A stretch of 64,000 bases of DNA from Octopus bimaculoides (taxonomy: Eukaryota). Positions 25,821 through 63,170 of this stretch are shown in pieces. Position 1 is the first letter of the stretch. The number at the start of each line of letters is the position of its first letter. A program made the translations under genes and the position numbers. Location of the stretch: the NCBI RefSeq assembly GCF_001194135.2, contig NC_068990.1, positions 17,662,856-17,726,855 of the forward strand. The letters run 5' to 3'. Below the pieces are notes generated by a model. It made no database searches, was not told the DNA's origin, and saw only the letters and a list, made by a program, of their open reading frames with translations.

Positions 25821-26756
25821 GGCTTCTTTCAGTTTTTGTTTACCAAATGTATTCACGGGGCTTTTGTTGGCCCAAGAGTAACATTGGGAATTTCAGGCAT
25901 GACAACTTTGTAAAACATATAATGGTCTTTATACAGCCTAGAGTTTAGCATTAAAAAAAATCAGAGACCCTGTTTGTCAGCCAAGAAAGAGATGACCACT
26001 GGAAGGAGGAAGGGGAAGAAGAAGAAGTCTCCATGAGGTTGCCCCGAAATCTCTGCTATTAGCTTCCTGCTTCAAAGCGATCCTAAAAAGTTTTTCGATG
26101 AAAATTTCTTGTTAATTTATACTCCAAACACCAACTTAATGATGACAAAGTTATTTTACTAAAGTCTTCTTTATTTTCTAACTTTGTTGAAACAAAAGAC
26201 TGTGTATTTTAGAGTAAATAGATTATTTACATGAATATCTGTCAACGTTCTTATTCATTTGTTTTCTTTAATTTACTTTGTTGTCATTCATAGATCATAA
26301 TAAATATATTTTCAGAACAATGGAGTAGCATTTTTCTCTTATTGTTTATCTCTGGTGCTCTTTCTTTCTTTTTTTTTTGTTCTATTTTTTTCCTTTTGTT
26401 TTATTTTTTCTCTATTGTTATTCTGGGATATTGTTTTTGTCTTTTATTCTTTGGTATTATTAAATAAATAAGTATCATTAATATGTTGAGAATCTATTCA
26501 ATCCTGAATATCTCCTCCTCCTTATGGTGGCAGGATATAAATGGTGGCAAAGTGCTGGGCATACTCACAATGGGCAGTGATCAGAATATAAATGGAATGG
26601 TTGAGTAAAGGAAGAGAGAGATATAGATGGTGGCAAGAGCCAGGGTACACCCTTGAGGTTTGAAGGTCGTAATATAAGTGGCAGTATATTTCGAAAGGAG
26701 TGGGATTAGAGAGTGCAGAGGGGTAGGGAAGTGCGTGGTGAAAACCTGGGTATATA

Positions 26757-27475
26757 TAGGGCTTTCCTATAAGGTGTTATCCACCCCTGATTGGAACTCT
26801 CCCGTATGACATGTACGCATGCTCAGTGACTTGCTTTAACAGTTGCAATCAGCTGAATGCACATTGCCNNNNNNNNNNNNNNNNNNNNNNNNNNNNNNNN
26901 NNNNNNNNNNNNNNNNNNNNNNNNNNNNNNNNNNNNNNNNNNNNNNNNNNNNNNNNNNNNNNNNNNNNNNNNNNNNNNNNNNNNNNNNNNNNNNNNNNNN
27001 NNNNNNNNNNNNNNNNNNNNNNNNNNNNNNNNNNNNNNNNNNNNNNNNNNNNNNNNNNNNNNNNNNNNNNNNNNNNNNNNNNNNNNNNNNNNNNNNNNNN
27101 NNNNNNNNNNNNNNNNNNNNNNNNNNNNNNNNNNNNNNNNNNNNNNNNNNNNNNNNNNNNNNNNNNNNNNNNNNNNNNNNNNNNNNNNNNNNNNNNNNNN
27201 NNNNNNNNNNNNNNNNNNNNNNNNNNNNNNNNNNNNNNNCCTTTCAACCTTTCAGTCAAGTCCGCCTTTCTTCCAGTAACATACTGTCCATATAATCTTA
27301 AATATTTCTTTAACTCAGGCACAGTAAGTACTTCGATAGCTGAATCATCAAGCTGCTTTATATCCATGATAAGACGTAAAACAATAACAATGGCGTGGGT
27401 AGCCTCCGGAAGTTTAATTATCTACATGGAGCGCCGCCTAGCCAAGGGAGATAACCTACTTATAGGAAAGCCCTA
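26757..27475 (-). mobile_element. TIR-bounded DNA transposon-like element carrying a SAP-domain ORF (interior in a gap)
   Basis: Perfect 19-bp inverted repeat TATAGGGCTTTCCTATAAG at 26755-26773 and 27459-27477; TA (or TATA) duplicated; it interrupts another dispersed repeat. Confidence 0.8.
27240..27367 (-). CDS. SAP DNA-binding domain ORF start (transposon-borne, continues into gap)
   Basis: MDIKQLDDSAIEVLTVPELKKYLRLYGQYVTGRKADLTERLKG matches the SAP pattern LTVxELKxxLxxxGxxxxGxKAxLxxRL; no stop before the gap. Confidence 0.8.
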
Positions 27476-27876
27476 TAGAAGCGGTGGGGGGGGGGCCTGC
27501 AGGATAGCAATGATTCAGAGAAACAGGCCCATGAGAACAGGATTGTGGAGTGAGAGGTAGGCGTAGTGTATGAAATGGAAATGCAAGGAAGAGAAGAGAT
27601 GTAGAGATGTAGTTTGGTTTGTTGTGGTAAGGTGTGTGAGAAGTTTTCTTGTTAAGTGTGGGTAAGGCACACAGTGCTTCTAGGACTCAGTTTCGCTGAT
27701 GTGGGTGGGTCTTCTCAAGATCCTCATATCGCCAGACATCTCGGTCCATTGTCATTTCCTCTGTGAAGCCCAACATCCTGAGAGCAGTTCTTATCATTTC
27801 ATAAATATATATAATTATAAATATATATAATTTAATCCTTTTATCTTTTCTTCTCTATTTTCTTTTCATTTTATAG

Positions 27877-30822: not shown

Positions 30823-31139
30823 GTGTATAGAGTTTACTATGATCGTCTGGTTGACGCAGAAGATCAAAACTGGATGTATGAATGCATACAAAATGTCTGT
30901 AATGATGAGCTAGAAGTTAATTTCCATGAACTGTTTAGCCATTTGGACGCTGATGAAGATGACCATGTTACTGATGAAGATATGCGAAGCTTAATCTATT
31001 GTGACTTTAGTGACCCCAAAAATGACAGTAAGAATTATCTAGAAGCACCTGATTTAGAGCTGCTGCGTACCATAACGGAAGGTTTACTTGATGAGTACAA
31101 TAACATGAGCAAGAAACCAATGAATTTGGTTCTCTTCAG
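30823..31139 (+). CDS. DNAH7: Exon 17 (includes EF-hand-like loop)
   Basis: tgtag|GTG..AG|gtttgt; VYRVYYDRLVD...LDADEDDHVTDED...SKKPMNLVLFR; 317 nt, phase 0 to 2. Confidence 0.97.
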
Positions 31140-31242
31140 GTTTGTTCAGTTATCTCCTTTTTTATATAATAAATTTCATTCTTATCTGGGATACATTGAA
31201 GGAATATAAATGAATCTGGGATTTGACTGGTGCTTTTTATTA

Positions 31243-32538
31243 CAAAGTTCATTCCAGATGTTTAGAGACATTTACAAGGGAGACATTTATTAATTTCAAA
31301 GTTAAAAATTCTAATGTCCTTCAAAGGAGGACCCTCTGACTTCAATGCATTGTTGTAGTGCTCCAGCTACTTTGTGAAGGCCCTATAAAAGCCCTCCAAA
31401 GTGAAGGTGTCCCAGACCATTTTCACAGCCGCCTGCATCTTCTCACTCTCTTCAAAATTACTGCATCTGAGGTTTTCCTTCAGCTTGGGGAAACAGCCAA
31501 AATTGCAAGGAGCAAGGTCTGGACTATAGGGAGGATGAAAAACAATTTTGATGTCCATCTCTGTCAAGTAGTTGGTTACCAGGATGGAATTGTGGACTGA
31601 TGCACTGTCCAGTGCAGTTGCTGCTGACTTGAGTGGAAGGGCTCTGGCCTTTTGTGATGAGCTCTCTTCTTGAACTCCCTCACAATCTCCACAAAGTACT
31701 CTTTGTTGACCATCTGGCCAGAGGGAACCCAGTAGATATAGATGATGCTGTTGCTGTTGAAAAATGGTATCATCACGAGCTTCCCAGTTGACTTGCTTTG
31801 CCTGGCCTTCATAGGTCTGGAAGAGCCTGGATGCTTCCATTTCTTGGACTCTGGATCACAACAGTAGTTCCAGCTTTTATTATTGGTCACTAGAGACTCA
31901 AGTACTCTTTAATTGGAGATAATTAGCTCAGCAATCTCCCTTCTGTCACCAATGCAACTTTCTTTCAGTTCATCATTGAACACCCTCAGAACAAACTTTA
32001 CACATGTTCAGACCTTCATGAATATTTCTGTGTACAGTTGCCACACCAACTCCAAACTATACTTATTGTCTTTATAGGCATACAGACAATCTTCATCCAG
32101 AAAATTGTGAATTTTCTTGACCAATTCAGATATTCTGATGTGCCTCTCCCTCTCACGCCTCTCATTGTCTCTAACTTCCTCTCTACCATTCTTGAACCTT
32201 TTGTGCCAATGAAAAGCAGATGCTCAGCTCCATACATGTTAATACATAAGCAGTCTGGAGCATTTCATAAGTTTCTGTAGCGTTTTTGCCCAGTTTAACA
32301 TGAAACTTTATTGCATAACAAACTTCCAACATCCCGACTGCATTCTGCAAACTAGTCAGTTGTGACAAGCAGTGTTTGGTGTGTTCAAATTGCTGTTACA
32401 GCCATCTCCTTCAATCTGGAATAAAAAAAAATGTTGGCAGGTCAGCTTATTAGTTGTATAGTACTAAAGTTACAACAATCAAGGGGAATTATAACTGCGT
32501 CTCTTAAACAAGTCTCAAAACTTCTGGAATGCACTTTG
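31243..32538 (-). mobile_element. Full-length decayed mariner transposon (1,296 bp)
   Basis: TA at 31241-31242 and 32539-32540; 27-bp TIRs, 24/27 identical (CAAAGTKCATTCCAGAWGTTTWGAGAC); remnants AIKFHVKLGKNATETYEML, DPESK..WKHPGS.RP.KARQSKS and HPPYSPDLAPCNF; many stops and frameshifts. Confidence 0.92.
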
Positions 32539-35346: not shown

Positions 35347-36951
35347 GTAAAATATTTCTTATGCCTCATGGAAAAGTTATACATTTTCAATAAATAGTTT
35401 GTAATCATTTAGACATTAATTCTTTTGTTGTATTTCTGTTGAAATACACTGCTTTTATCTCAATAAATTTTGAAAATAATGAGGAATTTGGTAAAATAAC
35501 TGTCATTATTGATCTGGTATTTGGAACATAAATTAACATGAAATTTTGATGAACAGTCTTAATTTAGATTATCTTAAAACTGAAAGTTTGTAGCATAGAA
35601 CCATATTAAGCTGGTGTTTGGAACATAAAATAACATGAAATTGTACTTTGGTTCACTTTAAAACAGGATGTTTGTGTCATTGGACTAGGGGCAGTTTTAA
35701 GCGGTTGACTTGAAAAGGGTTAACCCATTTGTTACTGTGTTTCTATTGGAACACACTACCTTTGCTTCAATTAATTTAAAAAATAATGAAGAATTTAGTA
35801 AAATACTTGTCATTATTAAGCTGGTATTTGGAGCATAAATTAACATGAAATTTTAACAGAAATATTAAATTTAAATCACTTCTTAAACAAGATGTGTGTA
35901 TCATAAAACCAAGGGAAATATCTGGTGGCTTGGTATCAGAAGGACTAAAGTGCTGTGGGTTCACAGAAATCATAAACAAATTGTTTTGTGGTAATAAGTT
36001 ATATCTCTATGTTCTGAGTCTAAACCCTTCCAGGATTGATAAACTAAAGTACCAGTTAGATATAAGTCAGTATAATCAACTGTTCCCTTTTTTCAAATTT
36101 CCTGGCCTTGTGCTTGTATAAGAAATCAATCATTTGGCATTTACCCTTTTGATACCAACCCACCTGAAACCATCCCAAGTTTTATGATACAAACCTGTTT
36201 TAAAGTGATCTAATCAACCCTAGTTTTTTGATCAAAATTTCATGCTAATTTATGTTTCAAACACCAACTTGATAATGAAGAAGTTATTTTACTGAATTTG
36301 TCATTATTTTCAAAATTAATTGAAATAAAGGTAGGGTATTTCAAAAGAAATATAGTGACGAAAGGATTAAAACATCAGTTTATGTCAGTAAACTATGGGA
36401 ACACAGAAAGGTAGAAAAATTTAAGTTCATGTAATGTCAACATTTCTGTCTTTATCATACTCAAGATGGCTATTTAGACCAACGTCAGCACTGATCATAG
36501 TCATGACCACTACATTGTCTAATATCTTCTCTTATATAAAACAGTAAGGTATGAATTGAGAGATATTTCACTGCTATTTCCAGCAGGTCAGATGACCAAA
36601 TAAAGACAAGAGCCTCCTCTATTAGTTTGTCAGAGGGAGAGGACAGAATGGCAATTAAAGGTCAATATTTCATGTCCTTAGAAAGAATGAGAAAAATATA
36701 TAACTTGTTTCTTCTGTAAACAAGATAAACTATTAGAAAATATAGATGATTCAACAACTGGCAGATCAAAACCTTTGAATATAATATACATGAACCTACA
36801 TTTAAACAGGTACTGAGTCTTTTGTAAATCTGTGTTCCAACTATCATATTTATCTAAGCCTATTTTTGACTCAAAAGATCATCTTTTTTTATGAGAAATA
36901 ATATCTCGAGAGACAGCTAAAGCTAAGTTGTTTTTATATTGCATTTTAAAG

Positions 36952-47634: not shown

Positions 47635-48741
47635 GTAAGTGATTTGATTTGAAATTTGTGATGTAGTTTGGGTAAAAGATTTCATCTGTCACCCAGTCCA
47701 ATACCACCACTTAATCCTTGGGTGTCTTTAGGGGAGTTTCCTTTGATAGCAAGCAGTCAAAATGTGATTTGCTACTTTCTACTCCAATAGGGTTTCTTAC
47801 ATCCTCCTCATCCTCTCCTACAAGTTTTGAAGGCATAAAGAACAGGGATGCTGCCCCTACTTTCTTGTGACAGTTATATAGAAAAGAAAAAAAAAATTGA
47901 TCAATCCAGCATGAGTTATTTGTGACAGGTCATTTATTATAACCTAAGAATATATATATTTGGTGAAAAAACACATGAAAATAACTGAAAGATACCATCA
48001 TTACCACCACAAGGCTTTGATCAACCCAGGGCTATAGTAGAAGACACTTGCCCCAAGGTGTCATGTAGTGTGACAAAACCTGAAACCATATGACTGGAAA
48101 GCAAACTTCTTAATGTCATAGCCATACCAGAATGCTTTAAAACGGGATCATTAACCAGGAGTGGATTTAGGCAGATTAGCATTAGAAGGATTAATCCATT
48201 TGTCATGGTATTTTTTGCTAAAATACATTGCCTTTGTTTTAATTAATTTTGAAAATAACAAAGAATTTTGTAAAATAACTTTTTCATTATTAAGCTGGTG
48301 TTTAGAACATAGATTAACATGCAACTTTGGTGGAAGGTTTTAGTCTAAATCCCTTTAAAACAGGGAGTTTGTATTATAGAACCAGGGTAGGTGTCAGGTG
48401 GGTTTGTGTTAAAAGGATTAAATACAGTTCAAATAAATACTATTTGCAGATTAATATTATTTGGAGTTCAAAGTTGGTGAGCTGGCAGAAATGTTAGCAT
48501 GCCAAACGAAATGCTTAGTGGTATTTCATCTGTCTTTATGTTCTGAGTTCAAATTTCGCCAAGGTTGACTTTGCCTTTCATTCTTTTCAGGTTTGATAAA
48601 TTGAATACCAGTTGCATACTGGGATTGATTTAATCGACTGCCCCCCCCTCACCCTCCCAAAAAAAATTTCGAGCCTAGAGCAGAAAAGAATATTGTTGAG
48701 TTCTTATTTTTTTATTTAACTGCTTTCTTCTTTTTCTGCAG

Positions 48742-60076: not shown

Positions 60077-60593
60077 GTCAGGATTGTCTTTTATTTTTTG
60101 TTTTTACAGATTAGATGATGATGATGATGGTGATTTGTTAACCACTCATTAAGAGTCTTTTTGATAATTATTGTACCATTATTAACAGCACCATTATCAA
60201 CATCATTGTTATGTTTTAATACTGAATTATCAACTTGGAGACAACACAACATATACTCAAAAATGCATGCTGATTAAAGCAGAACTTAAAAATCCACGTG
60301 CAAAAAGTATCATGCCACTTACGAAACAAACCAGTATGCAAATTAGAAGGCAGTCCAAAAGGACACAAGGTGAACGCATGAAATAAAGCAGAGTCACTAA
60401 ACTTAGTTCAATAGAATTAAATTTGAGCAATATAACACCACCACCACCATCAACATCATCATTATTATCAGGATCTTTTTTGTCAATAACAAAGTTAATT
60501 TTTTGTAATGAGGATGCTTAATGAAATTTTTGTTCTAAAGTAATTCAAAGGTGACTAGTGTTTTGTCTTTTTATTTGTTCCAATTGTGTACAG

Positions 60594-60726
60594 GCAACTT
60601 AAGGAAATTGAAGACAAAATTCTTGAAGTCCTCTCAACCTCTGAAGGAAATATTCTGGAAGATGAAACTGCTATTAAAGTTCTCTCTTCTTCTAAAGCTT
60701 TAGCTGATGAAATATCAGAAAAGCAA
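60594..60726 (+). CDS. DNAH7: Exon 33 (buttress)
   Basis: tacag|G..CAA|gtaagt; QLKEIEDKILEVLSTSEGNILEDETAIKVLSSSKALADEISEKQ; 133 nt. Confidence 0.97.
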
Positions 60727-61453
60727 GTAAGTTCATTCACAGAGAGTTTTATTGGTCACACATTTCTTGGTTTTGTGTGTGTGTGTGTGTGCATGCATGT
60801 CCATGTGCATGTGTGTATGTGTTTGTGTGCACATGTCTGTATGCATGCATGTGTGTGCATGCACATGTGCACACATGCATGTGTGTGTTTGTGTGCATGT
60901 GTATGTATGCATGCATGTGTGCATGTGCATGTGTGTATATCTCATCATCATCATCATCATCATAATATCCACTTTTCCTTGTTTGCATGGGTCAGACAGA
61001 AATTGTTGAGATTGAATTTCTAGGGGACCAGGTGCTCTTCTTGTTGCTAACCCTTACCTCTTTCCAAGCAAGGTAATATTTCCTTATGACTGGAAATGTT
61101 TCCATGACCCCCTCTAAATACCCAGGTTTTCACCACTCACTGCATCCCCCCCTCCATTCTCTACTCATGCTTCTTTGGCTTTGCCCTACCACTTATATCA
61201 TGACCTCTGTACCTCAAGAATATGCCCTGGCATTTACCAACATCTATCTCTCTCTTCTTTTACTCAACCATCCCATTTATAATCTGATCCCCATCTCTTT
61301 TGAGTATGCCCGGCATTTTGCCACCATCTGTCTCCTGCTCTTTCTTGCACTCTTGCTGTCTCTCACTCTGTCTCTCCTTCTCCTGCTCTTCCCTCAGGCT
61401 GGGTAACCATGTATCCTCCTTTACAGCAGCACACCTGTTTTTGACCTCATTAT

Positions 61454-61491
<38 letters not shown>

Positions 61492-62044
61492 CTGGGCAAC
61501 CATGTACCTCCCACCTGCCAATTCACTGCCTTACCCAATATATTACTGGTATTTATTTTATTGATCTCAGAGGGATGAAAAATAACCCTTTGGTCATCAT
61601 TTTCCTGCTGAAATACACTTCCTTTGTTTCAATTCANNNNNNNNNNTTTGGAAAATAACAAAGACTTTAGTAGAATGGCTTTGCCCTTATTAAGCTGGAA
61701 TGTTTTGGAACATAAATTAGTTTGAAATTTTGTTGGAAGGCTTTCATTTAGATCGTATTAAATCTGAAAGTAATATCAGAGAACTGCAGGTGGTCTCAGG
61801 TGTGTTCATGCTGAGAGAATTGAAGTTGATTCCAGCATGTTTCAAACCTGTGCCTAATGAGACCAGATTAAAGCTTTAAGATATTTCGTCTTGTCTTTTG
61901 TTTCTCTTCATCTGTAAACTTCCTTCCTTTTTCTTATAAAACATCTTAAAATATTCTATTTTATTAAATTTGTTTTCCCTTGTGTTTGGCTTTTCTCATA
62001 TTTTTTCCATTATTTTACTTTTATTTTCTTTTATTTTCATCCAG

Positions 62045-62323
62045 GCAATTGCTGAAGAAACTGAGAAAAAATTAGACATTGCACGTAGTAGCTACGAAGA
62101 AATCTCTGTTCACTCGACTATTTTATTTTTCTCTATTGCTGACTTAGCCAATATTGAACCTATGTACCAATATTCGTTGACCTGGTTTATAAATCTATTC
62201 CTCTTGTCAATTGAAAATGCTGAGCAATCCGAAAATCTCTCGGTACGACTGGAAAACCTGCATACCCATTTCACTTATTCTCTCTATGTAAATATTTGTC
62301 GGTCTCTGTTTGAAAAAGATAAG
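62045..62323 (+). CDS. DNAH7: Exon 34
   Basis: tccag|GCA..AAG|gtatgt; [11 protein letters not shown]...[10 protein letters not shown]...[11 protein letters not shown]; 279 nt. Confidence 0.97.
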
Positions 62324-62674: not shown

Positions 62675-63170
62675 ACATGTATGAGTGATTCAGACGTTTC
62701 AAGATGACCGAAAAAAATGTCAATTTTGGTAAATATTCTGGGAGACCTGCAACCAGCCAAACTGAGAAAAACATTGCAGACATGTGTGCAGCTGTAAGGG
62801 GAAATCATCAAATTACCATCCATGAGTTATCAGGGGATGTGCAGATTAGTTACGGTTCAGTTCAGTCCATTATCACTGAAGATTTGGGTATGAGACACAT
62901 GTCTGCCAAATTTGTGCCAAAACTGCTTTCAGTTGACCAAAAAGACACTTGGGTTTCAGTTGCACAAGGTCTCCTTGATTGTGTTGAGAACGATGAAAGC
63001 TTTTTGAAAACTTTGTGTAGGCCTCTGAGCAGGTATCACCAAACTTTTGGCAAAATTTGATGCAGATTCTCTGCTCAACTTTCTCTGTCATGGTCAATGC
63101 GATGATCACACACTACACACCTTCCTTCCAAGCACTGCTGTAAACAGCAAAAGGGAGCTAGGACATTAAA
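62675..63170. mobile_element. Mariner fragment with an internal inversion
   Basis: Plus strand SGRPATSQTE...ISYGSVQSIITEDLGMRHMSAKFVPKLL (62675-63010); minus strand N-terminus MTEKVEQRICIKFCQKFG (ATG at 63091). Confidence 0.85.

What the first reader, a model, noticed from the sequence alone, without database searches (positions are those of the whole stretch)
26755..27477. Candidate undescribed DNA transposon: self-palindromic TIRs, promoter-like ends and a SAP-domain ORF
Seen: (1) perfect 19-bp terminal IRs, each itself a hairpin (TATAGG-gcttt-CCTATA); (2) a duplicated TA, with the second host-repeat copy at about 61110 showing a 6-nt TAAATA at the matching spot, which favours TA-TSD and TAGGG ends (weak, one paralog); (3) an intact SAP ORF starting about 90 nt inside the right TIR, preceded by ETS-like CCGGAAGT (27406-27413) and YY1-like ACAATGGCG (27387-27395); (4) CCAAT (26790-26794, minus) and an NRF1-like ACGCATGC inside the left TIR. 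Known: SAP domains occur in KDZ/Zisupton proteins and, as recalled, in accessory nuclease ORFs of some two-gene transposons, but those have other TSD/TIR signatures. Inference: a young element of unresolved superfamily, possibly with two convergent genes, collapsed into the 371-N gap or internally deleted.
Basis: partly seen in the sequence, partly recalled or inferred. Interest (0 to 1): 0.75.

Follow-up and report, generated by a model that had tools for sequence, protein, structure and literature searches.

The report
Deleted ISL2EU transposon copy in octopus
The feature is a real but ordinary mobile-DNA remnant: a roughly 715-base, internally deleted copy of an ISL2EU-type (PIF/Harbinger-related) cut-and-paste transposon that keeps only its two ends and the first exon of the family's accessory SAP-SWIM-YqaJ nuclease gene.

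Summary
The perfect 19-bp terminal inverted repeats, the flanking TA/AT dinucleotide and the minus-strand SAP reading frame are all present. The superfamily is not unresolved.

**What the ORF is.** It is the N-terminal part of a roughly 570-600 aa SAP-SWIM-YqaJ nuclease. In three molluscs (Mya, Sinanodonta, Haliotis) this gene lies convergent with a THAP + HTH_Tnp_4 + DDE_Tnp_4 transposase gene. In Mya and Sinanodonta clear TIRs bound the pair, and these TIRs are homologous to the octopus ones (17/19 identical in Sinanodonta). In Mya the TSD is AT. That is the published definition of the ISL2EU group.

**The gap.** The two sides belong together.
- The right side encodes residues 1-43 of a 175-aa Octopus bimaculoides model.
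- The left side encodes its last 10 residues and the stop.
- The spacing is 532 nt as written against 528 nt expected.

**State of this copy.** It is non-autonomous. The nuclease gene is cut inside its SWIM finger, and no transposase is present.

**Motifs.** The hairpin within each TIR is not conserved in relatives. The ETS-like and NRF1-like end motifs are conserved.

Verdict: a new member of a known kind, of low interest.

The parts
26756..26757 (.). Left target-site duplication, AT. This is the favoured parse. The alternative is TA at 26755-26756.
   Evidence: AT directly flanks AGGGC..GCCCT on both sides. In 10 Mya copies, AT followed by 4 nt and then CTTTCC is the only parse that gives a direct repeat. 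The ISL2EU rule is an AT TSD. The single paralogous site fits TA better by 2 nt.
26758..26790 (+). Transposase-side TIR. It is perfect to 26773 and imperfect to about 26790. The conserved core is CTTTCCnATAA..GTTATC..CCCCTGAT.
   Evidence: Inverted repeat I2. It aligns with the Sinanodonta and Mya transposase-end TIRs.
26791..26835 (+). Transposase-side subterminal region, which would be the promoter or 5' UTR of the lost transposase gene. It holds GGAACTCT and the NRF1-like ACGCATGC at 26815-26822.
   Evidence: GGAACTCT and GCGCATGCG are conserved in Sinanodonta, and GCATGCGC in Mya. In Mya the transposase ATG lies 121 nt from the end, so the start codon is not retained here.
26836..26868 (-). 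End of the truncated nuclease ORF (GNVHSADCNC + TAA). The internal-deletion junction lies at about 26836-26839, inside the SWIM finger and 3 codons before the conserved exon-1/intron boundary.
   Evidence: Read directly. It is identical to the C-terminus of P0005 and P0273. L011 continues CNCTAG|gtaagag, followed by an exon 2 that encodes YqaJ.
26869..27239 (.). Assembly gap of 371 N. It is predicted to hold about 367 nt encoding residues 43-165 of the 175-aa remnant.
   Evidence: Arithmetic: 532 nt as written against 528 nt expected.
27240..27367 (-). Start of the nuclease ORF: the SAP domain, MDIKQLDDSAIEVLTVPELKKYLRLYGQYVTGRKADLTERLKG.
   Evidence: Pfam SAP 27.9 bits. 43/43 identical to P0273. 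P0273 is homologous over its whole length to the SAP-SWIM-YqaJ proteins P0053 (E 3e-50) and P0162 (E 3e-28).
27368..27442 (-). Nuclease-side promoter/5' UTR region. It holds the ETS-like CCGGAAGT (27406-27413), GGCGGCGCT and the YY1-like site (27387-27395).
   Evidence: ACTTCCG is invariant in the nuclease ends of Octopus, L011, Sinanodonta and Mya. TAGGyGGCGCT is shared by Octopus, L011 and Sinanodonta.
27443..27474 (-). Nuclease-side TIR. It is perfect from 27459 onwards.
27475..27476 (.). Right target-site duplication, AT. The alternative is TA at 27476-27477.
   Evidence: Same evidence as for the left TSD.

Best explanation
Window 26758-27474 is a non-autonomous, internally deleted copy of an ISL2EU-group transposon (PHIS / PIF-Harbinger superfamily). 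It sits antisense in an intron of a dynein heavy-chain gene.

**The full-length element.** This is shown in Mya and Sinanodonta, and in a decayed form in Haliotis. It is 4.6-6.5 kb long and carries two convergent genes.
- At one end is a spliced gene for a SAP-SWIM-YqaJ protein. Its nuclease domain is lambda-exonuclease-like, of the PD-(D/E)XK type.
- At the other end is a gene for a THAP + HTH_Tnp_4 + DDE_Tnp_4 transposase.
- Each gene starts about 90-120 nt inside its TIR, behind a conserved short promoter-like block.

**The octopus copy.** It retains:
- the nuclease-side TIR, the promoter block and nearly all of exon 1 (SAP, linker and the CxC half of the SWIM finger; at most 175 codons);
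- about 80 nt of the transposase-side end, fused directly to that exon.

It has lost the nuclease domain and the whole transposase gene.

**Mechanism (inferred, not shown here).** The copy can move only if a transposase is supplied in trans. That transposase would recognise the conserved C(T/A)TTCCnATAA core of the TIRs, cut the element out and paste it into an AT dinucleotide within an A/T-rich site, duplicating the AT. The role of the YqaJ protein in transposition is unknown in the literature. The 175-aa remnant is most likely non-functional.
For: **Protein homology.**
- The ORF on both sides of the gap matches one 175-aa O. bimaculoides model, P0273.
- P0273 aligns end to end with the N-termini of P0053 (45% identity, E 3e-50) and P0162 (32%, E 3e-28).
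- Pfam finds SAP + YqaJ in P0162, and SAP + SWIM (17.5 bits, cut-off 19.6) + YqaJ in P0053.

**Gene architecture.**
- In Mya, 10 loci of a 6.48-kb element are 99.9% identical. In 8 of them the annotation calls a convergent THAP/HTH_Tnp_4/DDE_Tnp_4 gene beside the nuclease gene.
- A direct scan of that transposase gives DDE_Tnp_4 144 bits, HTH_Tnp_4 56.7 bits and THAP 36.1 bits.
- Sinanodonta has the same arrangement. Haliotis has it too, unannotated.

**Homology of the ends.**
- The Sinanodonta TIR TATAGGGCATTCCAATAAG matches the octopus TATAGGGCTTTCCTATAAG at 17/19.
- CTTTCC.ATAA...TTA is invariant across five ends.
- Both subterminal regions also align.

**TSD.** It is AT in Mya. One tandem pair there shares a single AT.

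**Literature definition of ISL2EU.** AT TSD, THAP+HTH+DDE transposase, YqaJ second ORF. Non-autonomous families of about 750 bp exist, and families are known in the oyster.

**Deletion.** L011, a related cephalopod-like contig, continues past CNC into an intron and a YqaJ exon. The window instead runs into the other end of the element.

**Copy number.** At least 22 protein clusters (about 40 gene models) of this remnant occur in O. bimaculoides, all 209 aa or shorter.
Against:
- No phylogeny of the DDE domain was made.
- For this copy the TSD is ambiguous (AT or TA), and the only paralogous site fits TA by length.
- The interior of the element is unread, and read evidence was unavailable.
- The Repbase and Dfam libraries could not be consulted.
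Confidence: 0.9

Rival explanations
1. It is a Stowaway-like MITE of the Tc1/mariner superfamily (TA TSD) that happened to capture a SAP-coding fragment.
For: A TA parse of the TSD is possible, and the single paralogous site fits it by length. Mariner fragments lie in the same window.
Against: The TIRs and both subterminal regions are homologous to those of elements that carry a DDE_Tnp_4 (IS5/PIF-type) transposase, not a Tc1/mariner one. The ORF is that element's own second gene in its native position, about 100 nt from the TIR, and not a captured fragment.
Confidence: 0.03
2. It belongs to a new transposon superfamily with self-hairpin TIRs.
For: The hairpin within each TIR is real in this family. 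No paper in the searchable library mentions ISL2EU in octopus.
Against: All diagnostic features match ISL2EU. The hairpin depends on one variable base and on TSD bases, and it is absent from homologous TIRs.
Confidence: 0.02
3. It is a scaffolding artefact: two different partial copies, or unrelated contigs, were joined across the gap, so no single 715-bp element exists here.
For: The interior is 371 Ns, and no reads could be laid. As written, the frame is off by one.
Against: The two sides carry opposite ends of the same element in the correct inverted orientation. They carry the first 43 and last 10 codons of the same ORF on the same strand. They are spaced 532 nt apart against 528 expected.
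Confidence: 0.05
4. The truncated SAP protein is functional. It could be a trans-acting regulator of the family, analogous to truncated P-element repressors, or a co-opted host factor, expressed from the retained end promoter.
For: The derivative keeps the conserved promoter block and almost exactly exon 1. Many copies keep an open frame, and the N-terminal 43 residues are 90-100% identical among copies.
Against: Copies differ by frameshifts and internal deletions that give 58-182-aa products with different tails. The zinc finger is broken. High identity is equally explained by recent amplification. There are no expression data.
Confidence: 0.05

Closest known systems
ISL2EU (IS4EU) group of the PHIS / PIF-Harbinger superfamily, e.g. 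ISL2EU-10/11/15_CGi of Crassostrea gigas (Han et al. 2015, PMC4482050)
   Same: - 2-bp A/T TSD.
- Short TIRs.
- In autonomous relatives, a THAP+HTH_Tnp_4+DDE_Tnp_4 transposase plus a YqaJ second ORF of about 500-650 aa.
- Element length of 4.5-6.5 kb.
- Restricted to animals.
   Different: [quoted passage not shown] Here its N-terminus is resolved as SAP plus a SWIM-type finger, with a conserved intron inside the finger.
- The TIR does not start with the 'usual' GG.
- The base outside the TSD is T..A (apparent target TATA) rather than A..T (AATT).
- No octopus family is reported in the papers searched.
ISL2EU-2_PXyl, a 746-bp non-autonomous ISL2EU of Plutella xylostella (PMC4482050, Table S2 and Fig. 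S1)
   Same: - Size of about 0.7 kb.
- No transposase.
- AT TSD.
- A constant extra base outside the TSD on each side, which extends the apparent TIR.
   Different: The Plutella element has no reported ORF. The octopus element retains exon 1 of the nuclease gene and both promoter-like blocks.
PIF/Harbinger sensu stricto
   Same: Related DDE_Tnp_4 transposase, two-gene organisation, A/T-rich targets.
   Different: Harbinger has a 3-bp TWA TSD and a Myb/SANT second ORF. Neither fits here: flanks cannot be parsed as a 3-bp repeat, and the second ORF is SAP-SWIM-YqaJ.
Zisupton/KDZ elements
   Same: A SAP domain occurs in a transposon protein.
   Different: By my recollection those have 8-bp TSDs and a different transposase. 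Here the TSD is 2 bp and the partner transposase is IS5/PIF-type.

Membership tests
ISL2EU group (PHIS superfamily) | 2-bp TSD, typically AT (window copy) | tested here: inconclusive
   AT flanks AGGGC..GCCCT on both sides, but TA flanking TAGGGC..GCCCTA fits equally well. The one paralogous site fits TA by length and extends only 8 nt past the junction. A 3-bp parse is impossible. A 4-bp TATA parse is possible but predicts a longer empty site.
ISL2EU group (PHIS superfamily) | 2-bp AT TSD in the homologous autonomous element | tested here: met
   In 10 Mya copies, AT next to TGTCC..GGACA is the only parse that gives a direct repeat. It holds at both ends in the copies whose two ends were read, except the right end of L005. 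A tandem pair shares one AT.
ISL2EU group (PHIS superfamily) | [quoted passage not shown] | tested here: met
   It is absent from the window copy, which is non-autonomous. It is present in the elements that share this copy's TIRs and ORF: Mya (DDE_Tnp_4 144 bits, HTH_Tnp_4 56.7, THAP 36.1), Sinanodonta and Haliotis.
ISL2EU group (PHIS superfamily) | Second ORF with a YqaJ exonuclease domain | tested here: met
   The window ORF is the N-terminal part of that protein. The YqaJ domain is present in full-length relatives at 63-73 bits. It has been deleted from the window copy.
ISL2EU group (PHIS superfamily) | Terminal inverted repeats (6-259 bp) | tested here: met
   19 bp perfect, about 33 bp imperfect.
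ISL2EU group (PHIS superfamily) | Transposase falls in the ISL2EU clade of a DDE-domain phylogeny | not tested
   No reference set of PHIS transposases was on hand. Only the domain architecture was used.
PIF/Harbinger sensu stricto | 3-bp TWA TSD and a Myb/SANT second ORF | tested here: not met
   No 3-bp direct repeat can be parsed at the ends. The second ORF is SAP-SWIM-YqaJ.
Tc1/mariner (Stowaway-like MITE) | TA TSD, with TIRs matching a Tc1/mariner transposon | tested here: not met
   A TA parse is possible, but the TIRs match DDE_Tnp_4 elements.
Zisupton/KDZ | 8-bp TSD and a KDZ transposase | tested here: not met
   There is no 8-bp repeat at the ends. The partner transposase is IS5/PIF-type.

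The most novel reading that the evidence does not exclude
The exon-1-only derivative may not be mere debris. It keeps both conserved end promoters facing each other across a 175-codon SAP frame. Dozens of copies could then produce either of two things. One is a truncated SAP/half-SWIM protein that competes with the full nuclease or binds transposon ends, acting as a self-encoded repressor. The other is convergent transcripts that feed small-RNA silencing of the family. Either would give a first functional handle on why ISL2EU elements carry the YqaJ gene at all.
Probability: 0.06. Interest if true: 0.5.

Novelty: new member of a known kind. Interest (0 to 1): 0.2.

Why it matters
The value lies mainly in annotation.
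- It places an unclassified octopus repeat in a described group.
- About 40 UniProt 'SAP domain-containing protein' models of O. bimaculoides turn out to be transposon remnants. One of them is a chimeric model with a Kazal domain.
- The 371-N gap can now be predicted to hold about 367 nt of known coding content.

Two by-products may interest transposon specialists.
- The ISL2EU second ORF has a defined SAP-SWIM-YqaJ architecture, with a conserved intron and conserved ETS-like and NRF1-like promoter blocks at the element ends across distant molluscs.
- The Mya arenaria family has 12 loci that encode the identical nuclease, and 10 copies are 99.9% identical in DNA. It looks recently active. It would be a good system for the open question of what the YqaJ nuclease does in ISL2EU transposition.

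Tried and rejected
- **Genomic copies of the octopus models.** The look-up of encoding contigs found no record for P0001 or P0002. No further octopus copies were available as DNA, so the TSD could not be fixed from many copies.
- **First protein search.** The 43-aa fragment found only two short octopus models. The link to full-length proteins came from the index-free HMMER search.
- **Intron hypothesis.** I first supposed an intron after '...DDKSE' to explain the different tails. I rejected this when P0273 showed continuous coding there, homologous to P0053. The differing tails are frameshifts or deletions, or artefacts of gene modelling.
- **Empty site.** The paralogous repeat near 61115 does not continue into the right flank beyond 8 nt.
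- **Literature.** A search for SAP domain + transposon + YqaJ found 0 papers. A search for YqaJ + transposon + SWIM found nothing relevant. A search for ISL2EU + octopus found 0 papers.
- **Metagenomes.** A scan with P0273 found no relative.
- **Hairpin.** I rejected the TIR hairpin as a functional feature because it is not conserved.
- **'Transposase start'.** I rejected MYACSVTC... (26811, + strand). Beyond about 26836 that frame is antisense to the nuclease ORF, and in Mya the transposase ATG lies further from the end than the stretch retained here.
Full report
**The observation.** The window holds a perfect 19-bp inverted repeat, TATAGGGCTTTCCTATAAG at 26755-26773 and its complement at 27459-27477. 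The 17-nt core occurs nowhere else in the 64 kb, even with three mismatches allowed. Each arm can fold as TATAGG-gcttt-CCTATA, at -5.8 kcal/mol and z = -2.4. On the minus strand an ATG at 27367 opens MDIKQLDDSAIEVLTVPELKKYLRLYGQYVTGRKADLTERLKG and runs into the 371-N gap. Pfam calls it a SAP domain at 27.9 bits against a cut-off of 23.9.

**The gap, which was to be tested first.** The test I could make was by homology.
- An index-free HMMER search with the fragment and two short octopus relatives returned O. bimaculoides models that begin with the same 43 residues and end in ...GNVHSADCNC.
- That decapeptide plus a TAA stop is what the minus strand encodes immediately left of the gap, at 26868 to 26836.
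- The longest uninterrupted model of this subfamily, P0273 (UniProt A0A0L8IGG2), has 175 aa, or 528 nt with the stop. Its first 43 residues are 43/43 identical to the window.
- In the window, ATG to stop is 532 nt with the 371 Ns.

So the two sides carry the two ends of one ORF, on the same strand, in the right order and at the right distance. They also carry the two arms of the TIR. Continuity is strongly supported. The true gap should be about 367 nt, and the frame as written is off by one, which means nothing for an estimated gap.

**What the ORF is.** P0273 aligns over its full length with the N-termini of much longer mollusc proteins. Against P0053 of Sinanodonta woodiana it shows 45% identity (E 3e-50). 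Against P0162 of Mya arenaria it shows 32% identity (E 3e-28).
- These proteins are about 565-600 aa. They carry a SAP domain and a C-terminal YqaJ domain at 64-67 bits.
- In P0053, Pfam also gives a just sub-threshold SWIM finger: 17.5 bits against 19.6, with the pattern CxC..CxH.
- The nearest solved structure is a lambda-exonuclease-type enzyme, 3syy (E 6e-8).
- The D...ExK motif (ASPDG...EIKCP) is visible in P0053 and in L011.
- The family is multi-copy in many bivalves and gastropods.

**Genomic context of the full-length protein.**
- *Mya arenaria.* The identical 581-aa protein is encoded at 12 loci. Ten of them share a 6.48-kb segment at 99.9% identity with sharp boundaries. In 8 of the 10 loci the annotation calls a convergent gene beside the nuclease gene. 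Its product has THAP (36.1 bits), HTH_Tnp_4 (56.7) and DDE_Tnp_4 (144).
- *Sinanodonta.* The same pair of convergent genes lies in a 4.57-kb element.
- *Haliotis.* The pair is also present, unannotated and decayed.
- *Intron.* The nuclease gene has a conserved intron directly after the CxC..TAG of the SWIM finger.

**The ends are homologous.**
- The Sinanodonta TIR is TATAGGGCATTCCAATAAG, 17 of 19 identical to the octopus TIR.
- The Mya ends read [AT]TGTCCTTTCCGATAAC.
- In a five-end alignment, CTTTCC.ATAA...TTA is invariant.
- Homology continues inward on both sides. At the nuclease end, TAGGyGGCGCT and an invariant ACTTCCG lie 30-50 nt upstream of the ATG. At the transposase end, GGAACTCT and GCGCATGCG-like motifs are shared.
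That role is an inference, as no expression data were available.
- The CCAAT is not conserved.
- The hairpin in the TIR depends on one variable base (T, where relatives have G or A) and on bases outside the element. It is absent in Mya, Sinanodonta and L011, so I regard it as incidental.

**Classification.** Published work defines the ISL2EU group of the PIF/Harbinger-ISL2EU-Spy superfamily as follows (PMC4482050, PMC4122938):
- a 2-bp AT TSD;
- a transposase with DDE, HTH and THAP domains;
- a second ORF with a YqaJ exonuclease domain;
- TIRs of 6-259 bp;
- autonomous elements of about 4.8 kb;
- non-autonomous families as short as 746 bp;
- several families in the oyster.

The Mya and Sinanodonta elements meet the architecture and TIR criteria, and Mya also shows the AT TSD. 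The octopus element shares their TIRs, subterminal regions and ORF. It is therefore an ISL2EU element.

**Why it is non-autonomous.** A related contig, L011 (Logan assembly of run ERR12120951; the tool does not name the organism), has the same kind of end (AGCACTTTCCGATAAGG...) and a 67%-identical exon 1. It continues CNCTAG|gtaagag into an intron and then a YqaJ exon at 73 bits. In the window, the sequence after CNC is TAA, followed by about 80 nt that align with the transposase-side end. The copy is thus an internal-deletion derivative. It keeps the nuclease-side end and nearly all of exon 1, joined to the last roughly 80 nt of the other end. There is no nuclease domain, only half a SWIM finger and no transposase. 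tblastn of the Mya transposase finds nothing in the window. O. bimaculoides has at least 22 clusters (about 40 gene models) of such remnants, 58-182 aa long, with various frameshifts and deletions, plus a second subfamily that is closer to L011.

**The TSD.** The ends read ...GGGTATAT-AT-AGGGC...GCCCT-AT-AGAAG. Equally, they can be read as TA-TAGGGC...GCCCTA-TA.
- In Mya, only AT followed by four bases and then CTTTCC gives a direct repeat, and a tandem pair shares one AT.
- The same spacing holds for octopus and Sinanodonta, and for the Haliotis right end, under the AT parse.
- The constant outer base (T...A) parallels the constant A...T of the published Plutella family. This would make the target TATA.
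- Against this, the only paralogous site (61115-61338, 77% identical) aligns without a gap to the TA parse. Its similarity extends only 8 nt past the junction, and the site is a TA run prone to slippage.

I favour AT by about 60:40. Many copies are needed to settle it.

**Mechanism.**
- *Shown:* the anatomy, and the homology to two-gene ISL2EU elements.
- *Inferred:* mobilisation in trans by a THAP-DDE_Tnp_4 transposase that binds the conserved TIR core, followed by cut-and-paste into AT. I could not show such a transposase in O. bimaculoides.
- *Unknown:* the function of the YqaJ protein in transposition. The literature says so explicitly. The remnant ORF is most likely inert.

**Verdict.** It is a new (octopus) member of a known kind, and interest is low.

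Noticed in passing
window 24880-25031, 30823-31150, 60586-60740, 62060-62300 (+ strand): Exons of a dynein heavy-chain gene: Pfam AAA_7 at 97 bits and AAA_9 at 44 bits. The transposon lies in one of its introns, with the nuclease ORF antisense to the host gene.
   Followed up: partly
window 31367-31840 (-) and 62704-63060 (+): Fragments of mariner-like transposase genes. The first gives DDE_3 at 29.5 bits and contains HPPYSPDLAP. The second looks like an N-terminal HTH part, with no Pfam hit. They are unrelated to the ISL2EU element.
   Followed up: partly
L001-L010 (Mya arenaria GCA_026914265.1), element at about 9914-16397 of each locus: A 6.48-kb ISL2EU family. Ten copies are 99.9% identical, and the nuclease protein is identical at 12 loci. 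L002 holds a head-to-tail tandem pair that shares a single AT. L001 carries an extra ~260 bp near its nuclease end. The family looks recently or currently active.
   Followed up: partly
P0006 (UniProt A0A0L8I7X3, O. bimaculoides, 278 aa): A chimeric gene model. The transposon's SAP exon is spliced onto a Kazal-domain, transmembrane-like host sequence with an acidic low-complexity tail. It is either an annotation artefact or an exonised transposon copy.
   Followed up: no
P0281, P0285, P0286, P0291 (O. bimaculoides) and L011: A second octopus subfamily (MNIKQLELKNYLRLHGQYVT...CNCTAGKEHV) is closer to the L011 element. It reads through into the conserved intron, so longer and possibly full-length copies of that subfamily may exist in the genome.
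   Followed up: no
window 26090-26220; similar copies at 35442-35862, 36222-36329, 48218-48328, 5107-5211, 61648-61782: A short interspersed repeat of about 110 nt at 73-82% identity, with at least six further copies in the window. The repeat that hosts the insertion (26530-26756 against 61115-61338) is a different one.
   Followed up: no
L012 9948-12283 (-) (Haliotis cracherodii): An unannotated THAP-DDE_Tnp_4 transposase gene, convergent to the annotated SAP-YqaJ gene. It has an internal duplication of about 257 bp (repeated segments near 10263 and 10520) and a degenerate left TIR.
   Followed up: partly
window gaps at 7007, 17428, 24332, 42193 and others: Most assembly gaps are bordered by microsatellites, such as (TA)n/(TATG)n, (AAT)n and (CA)n. 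The gap inside the transposon is not. This fits a gap caused by a multi-copy repeat rather than by low complexity.
   Followed up: no
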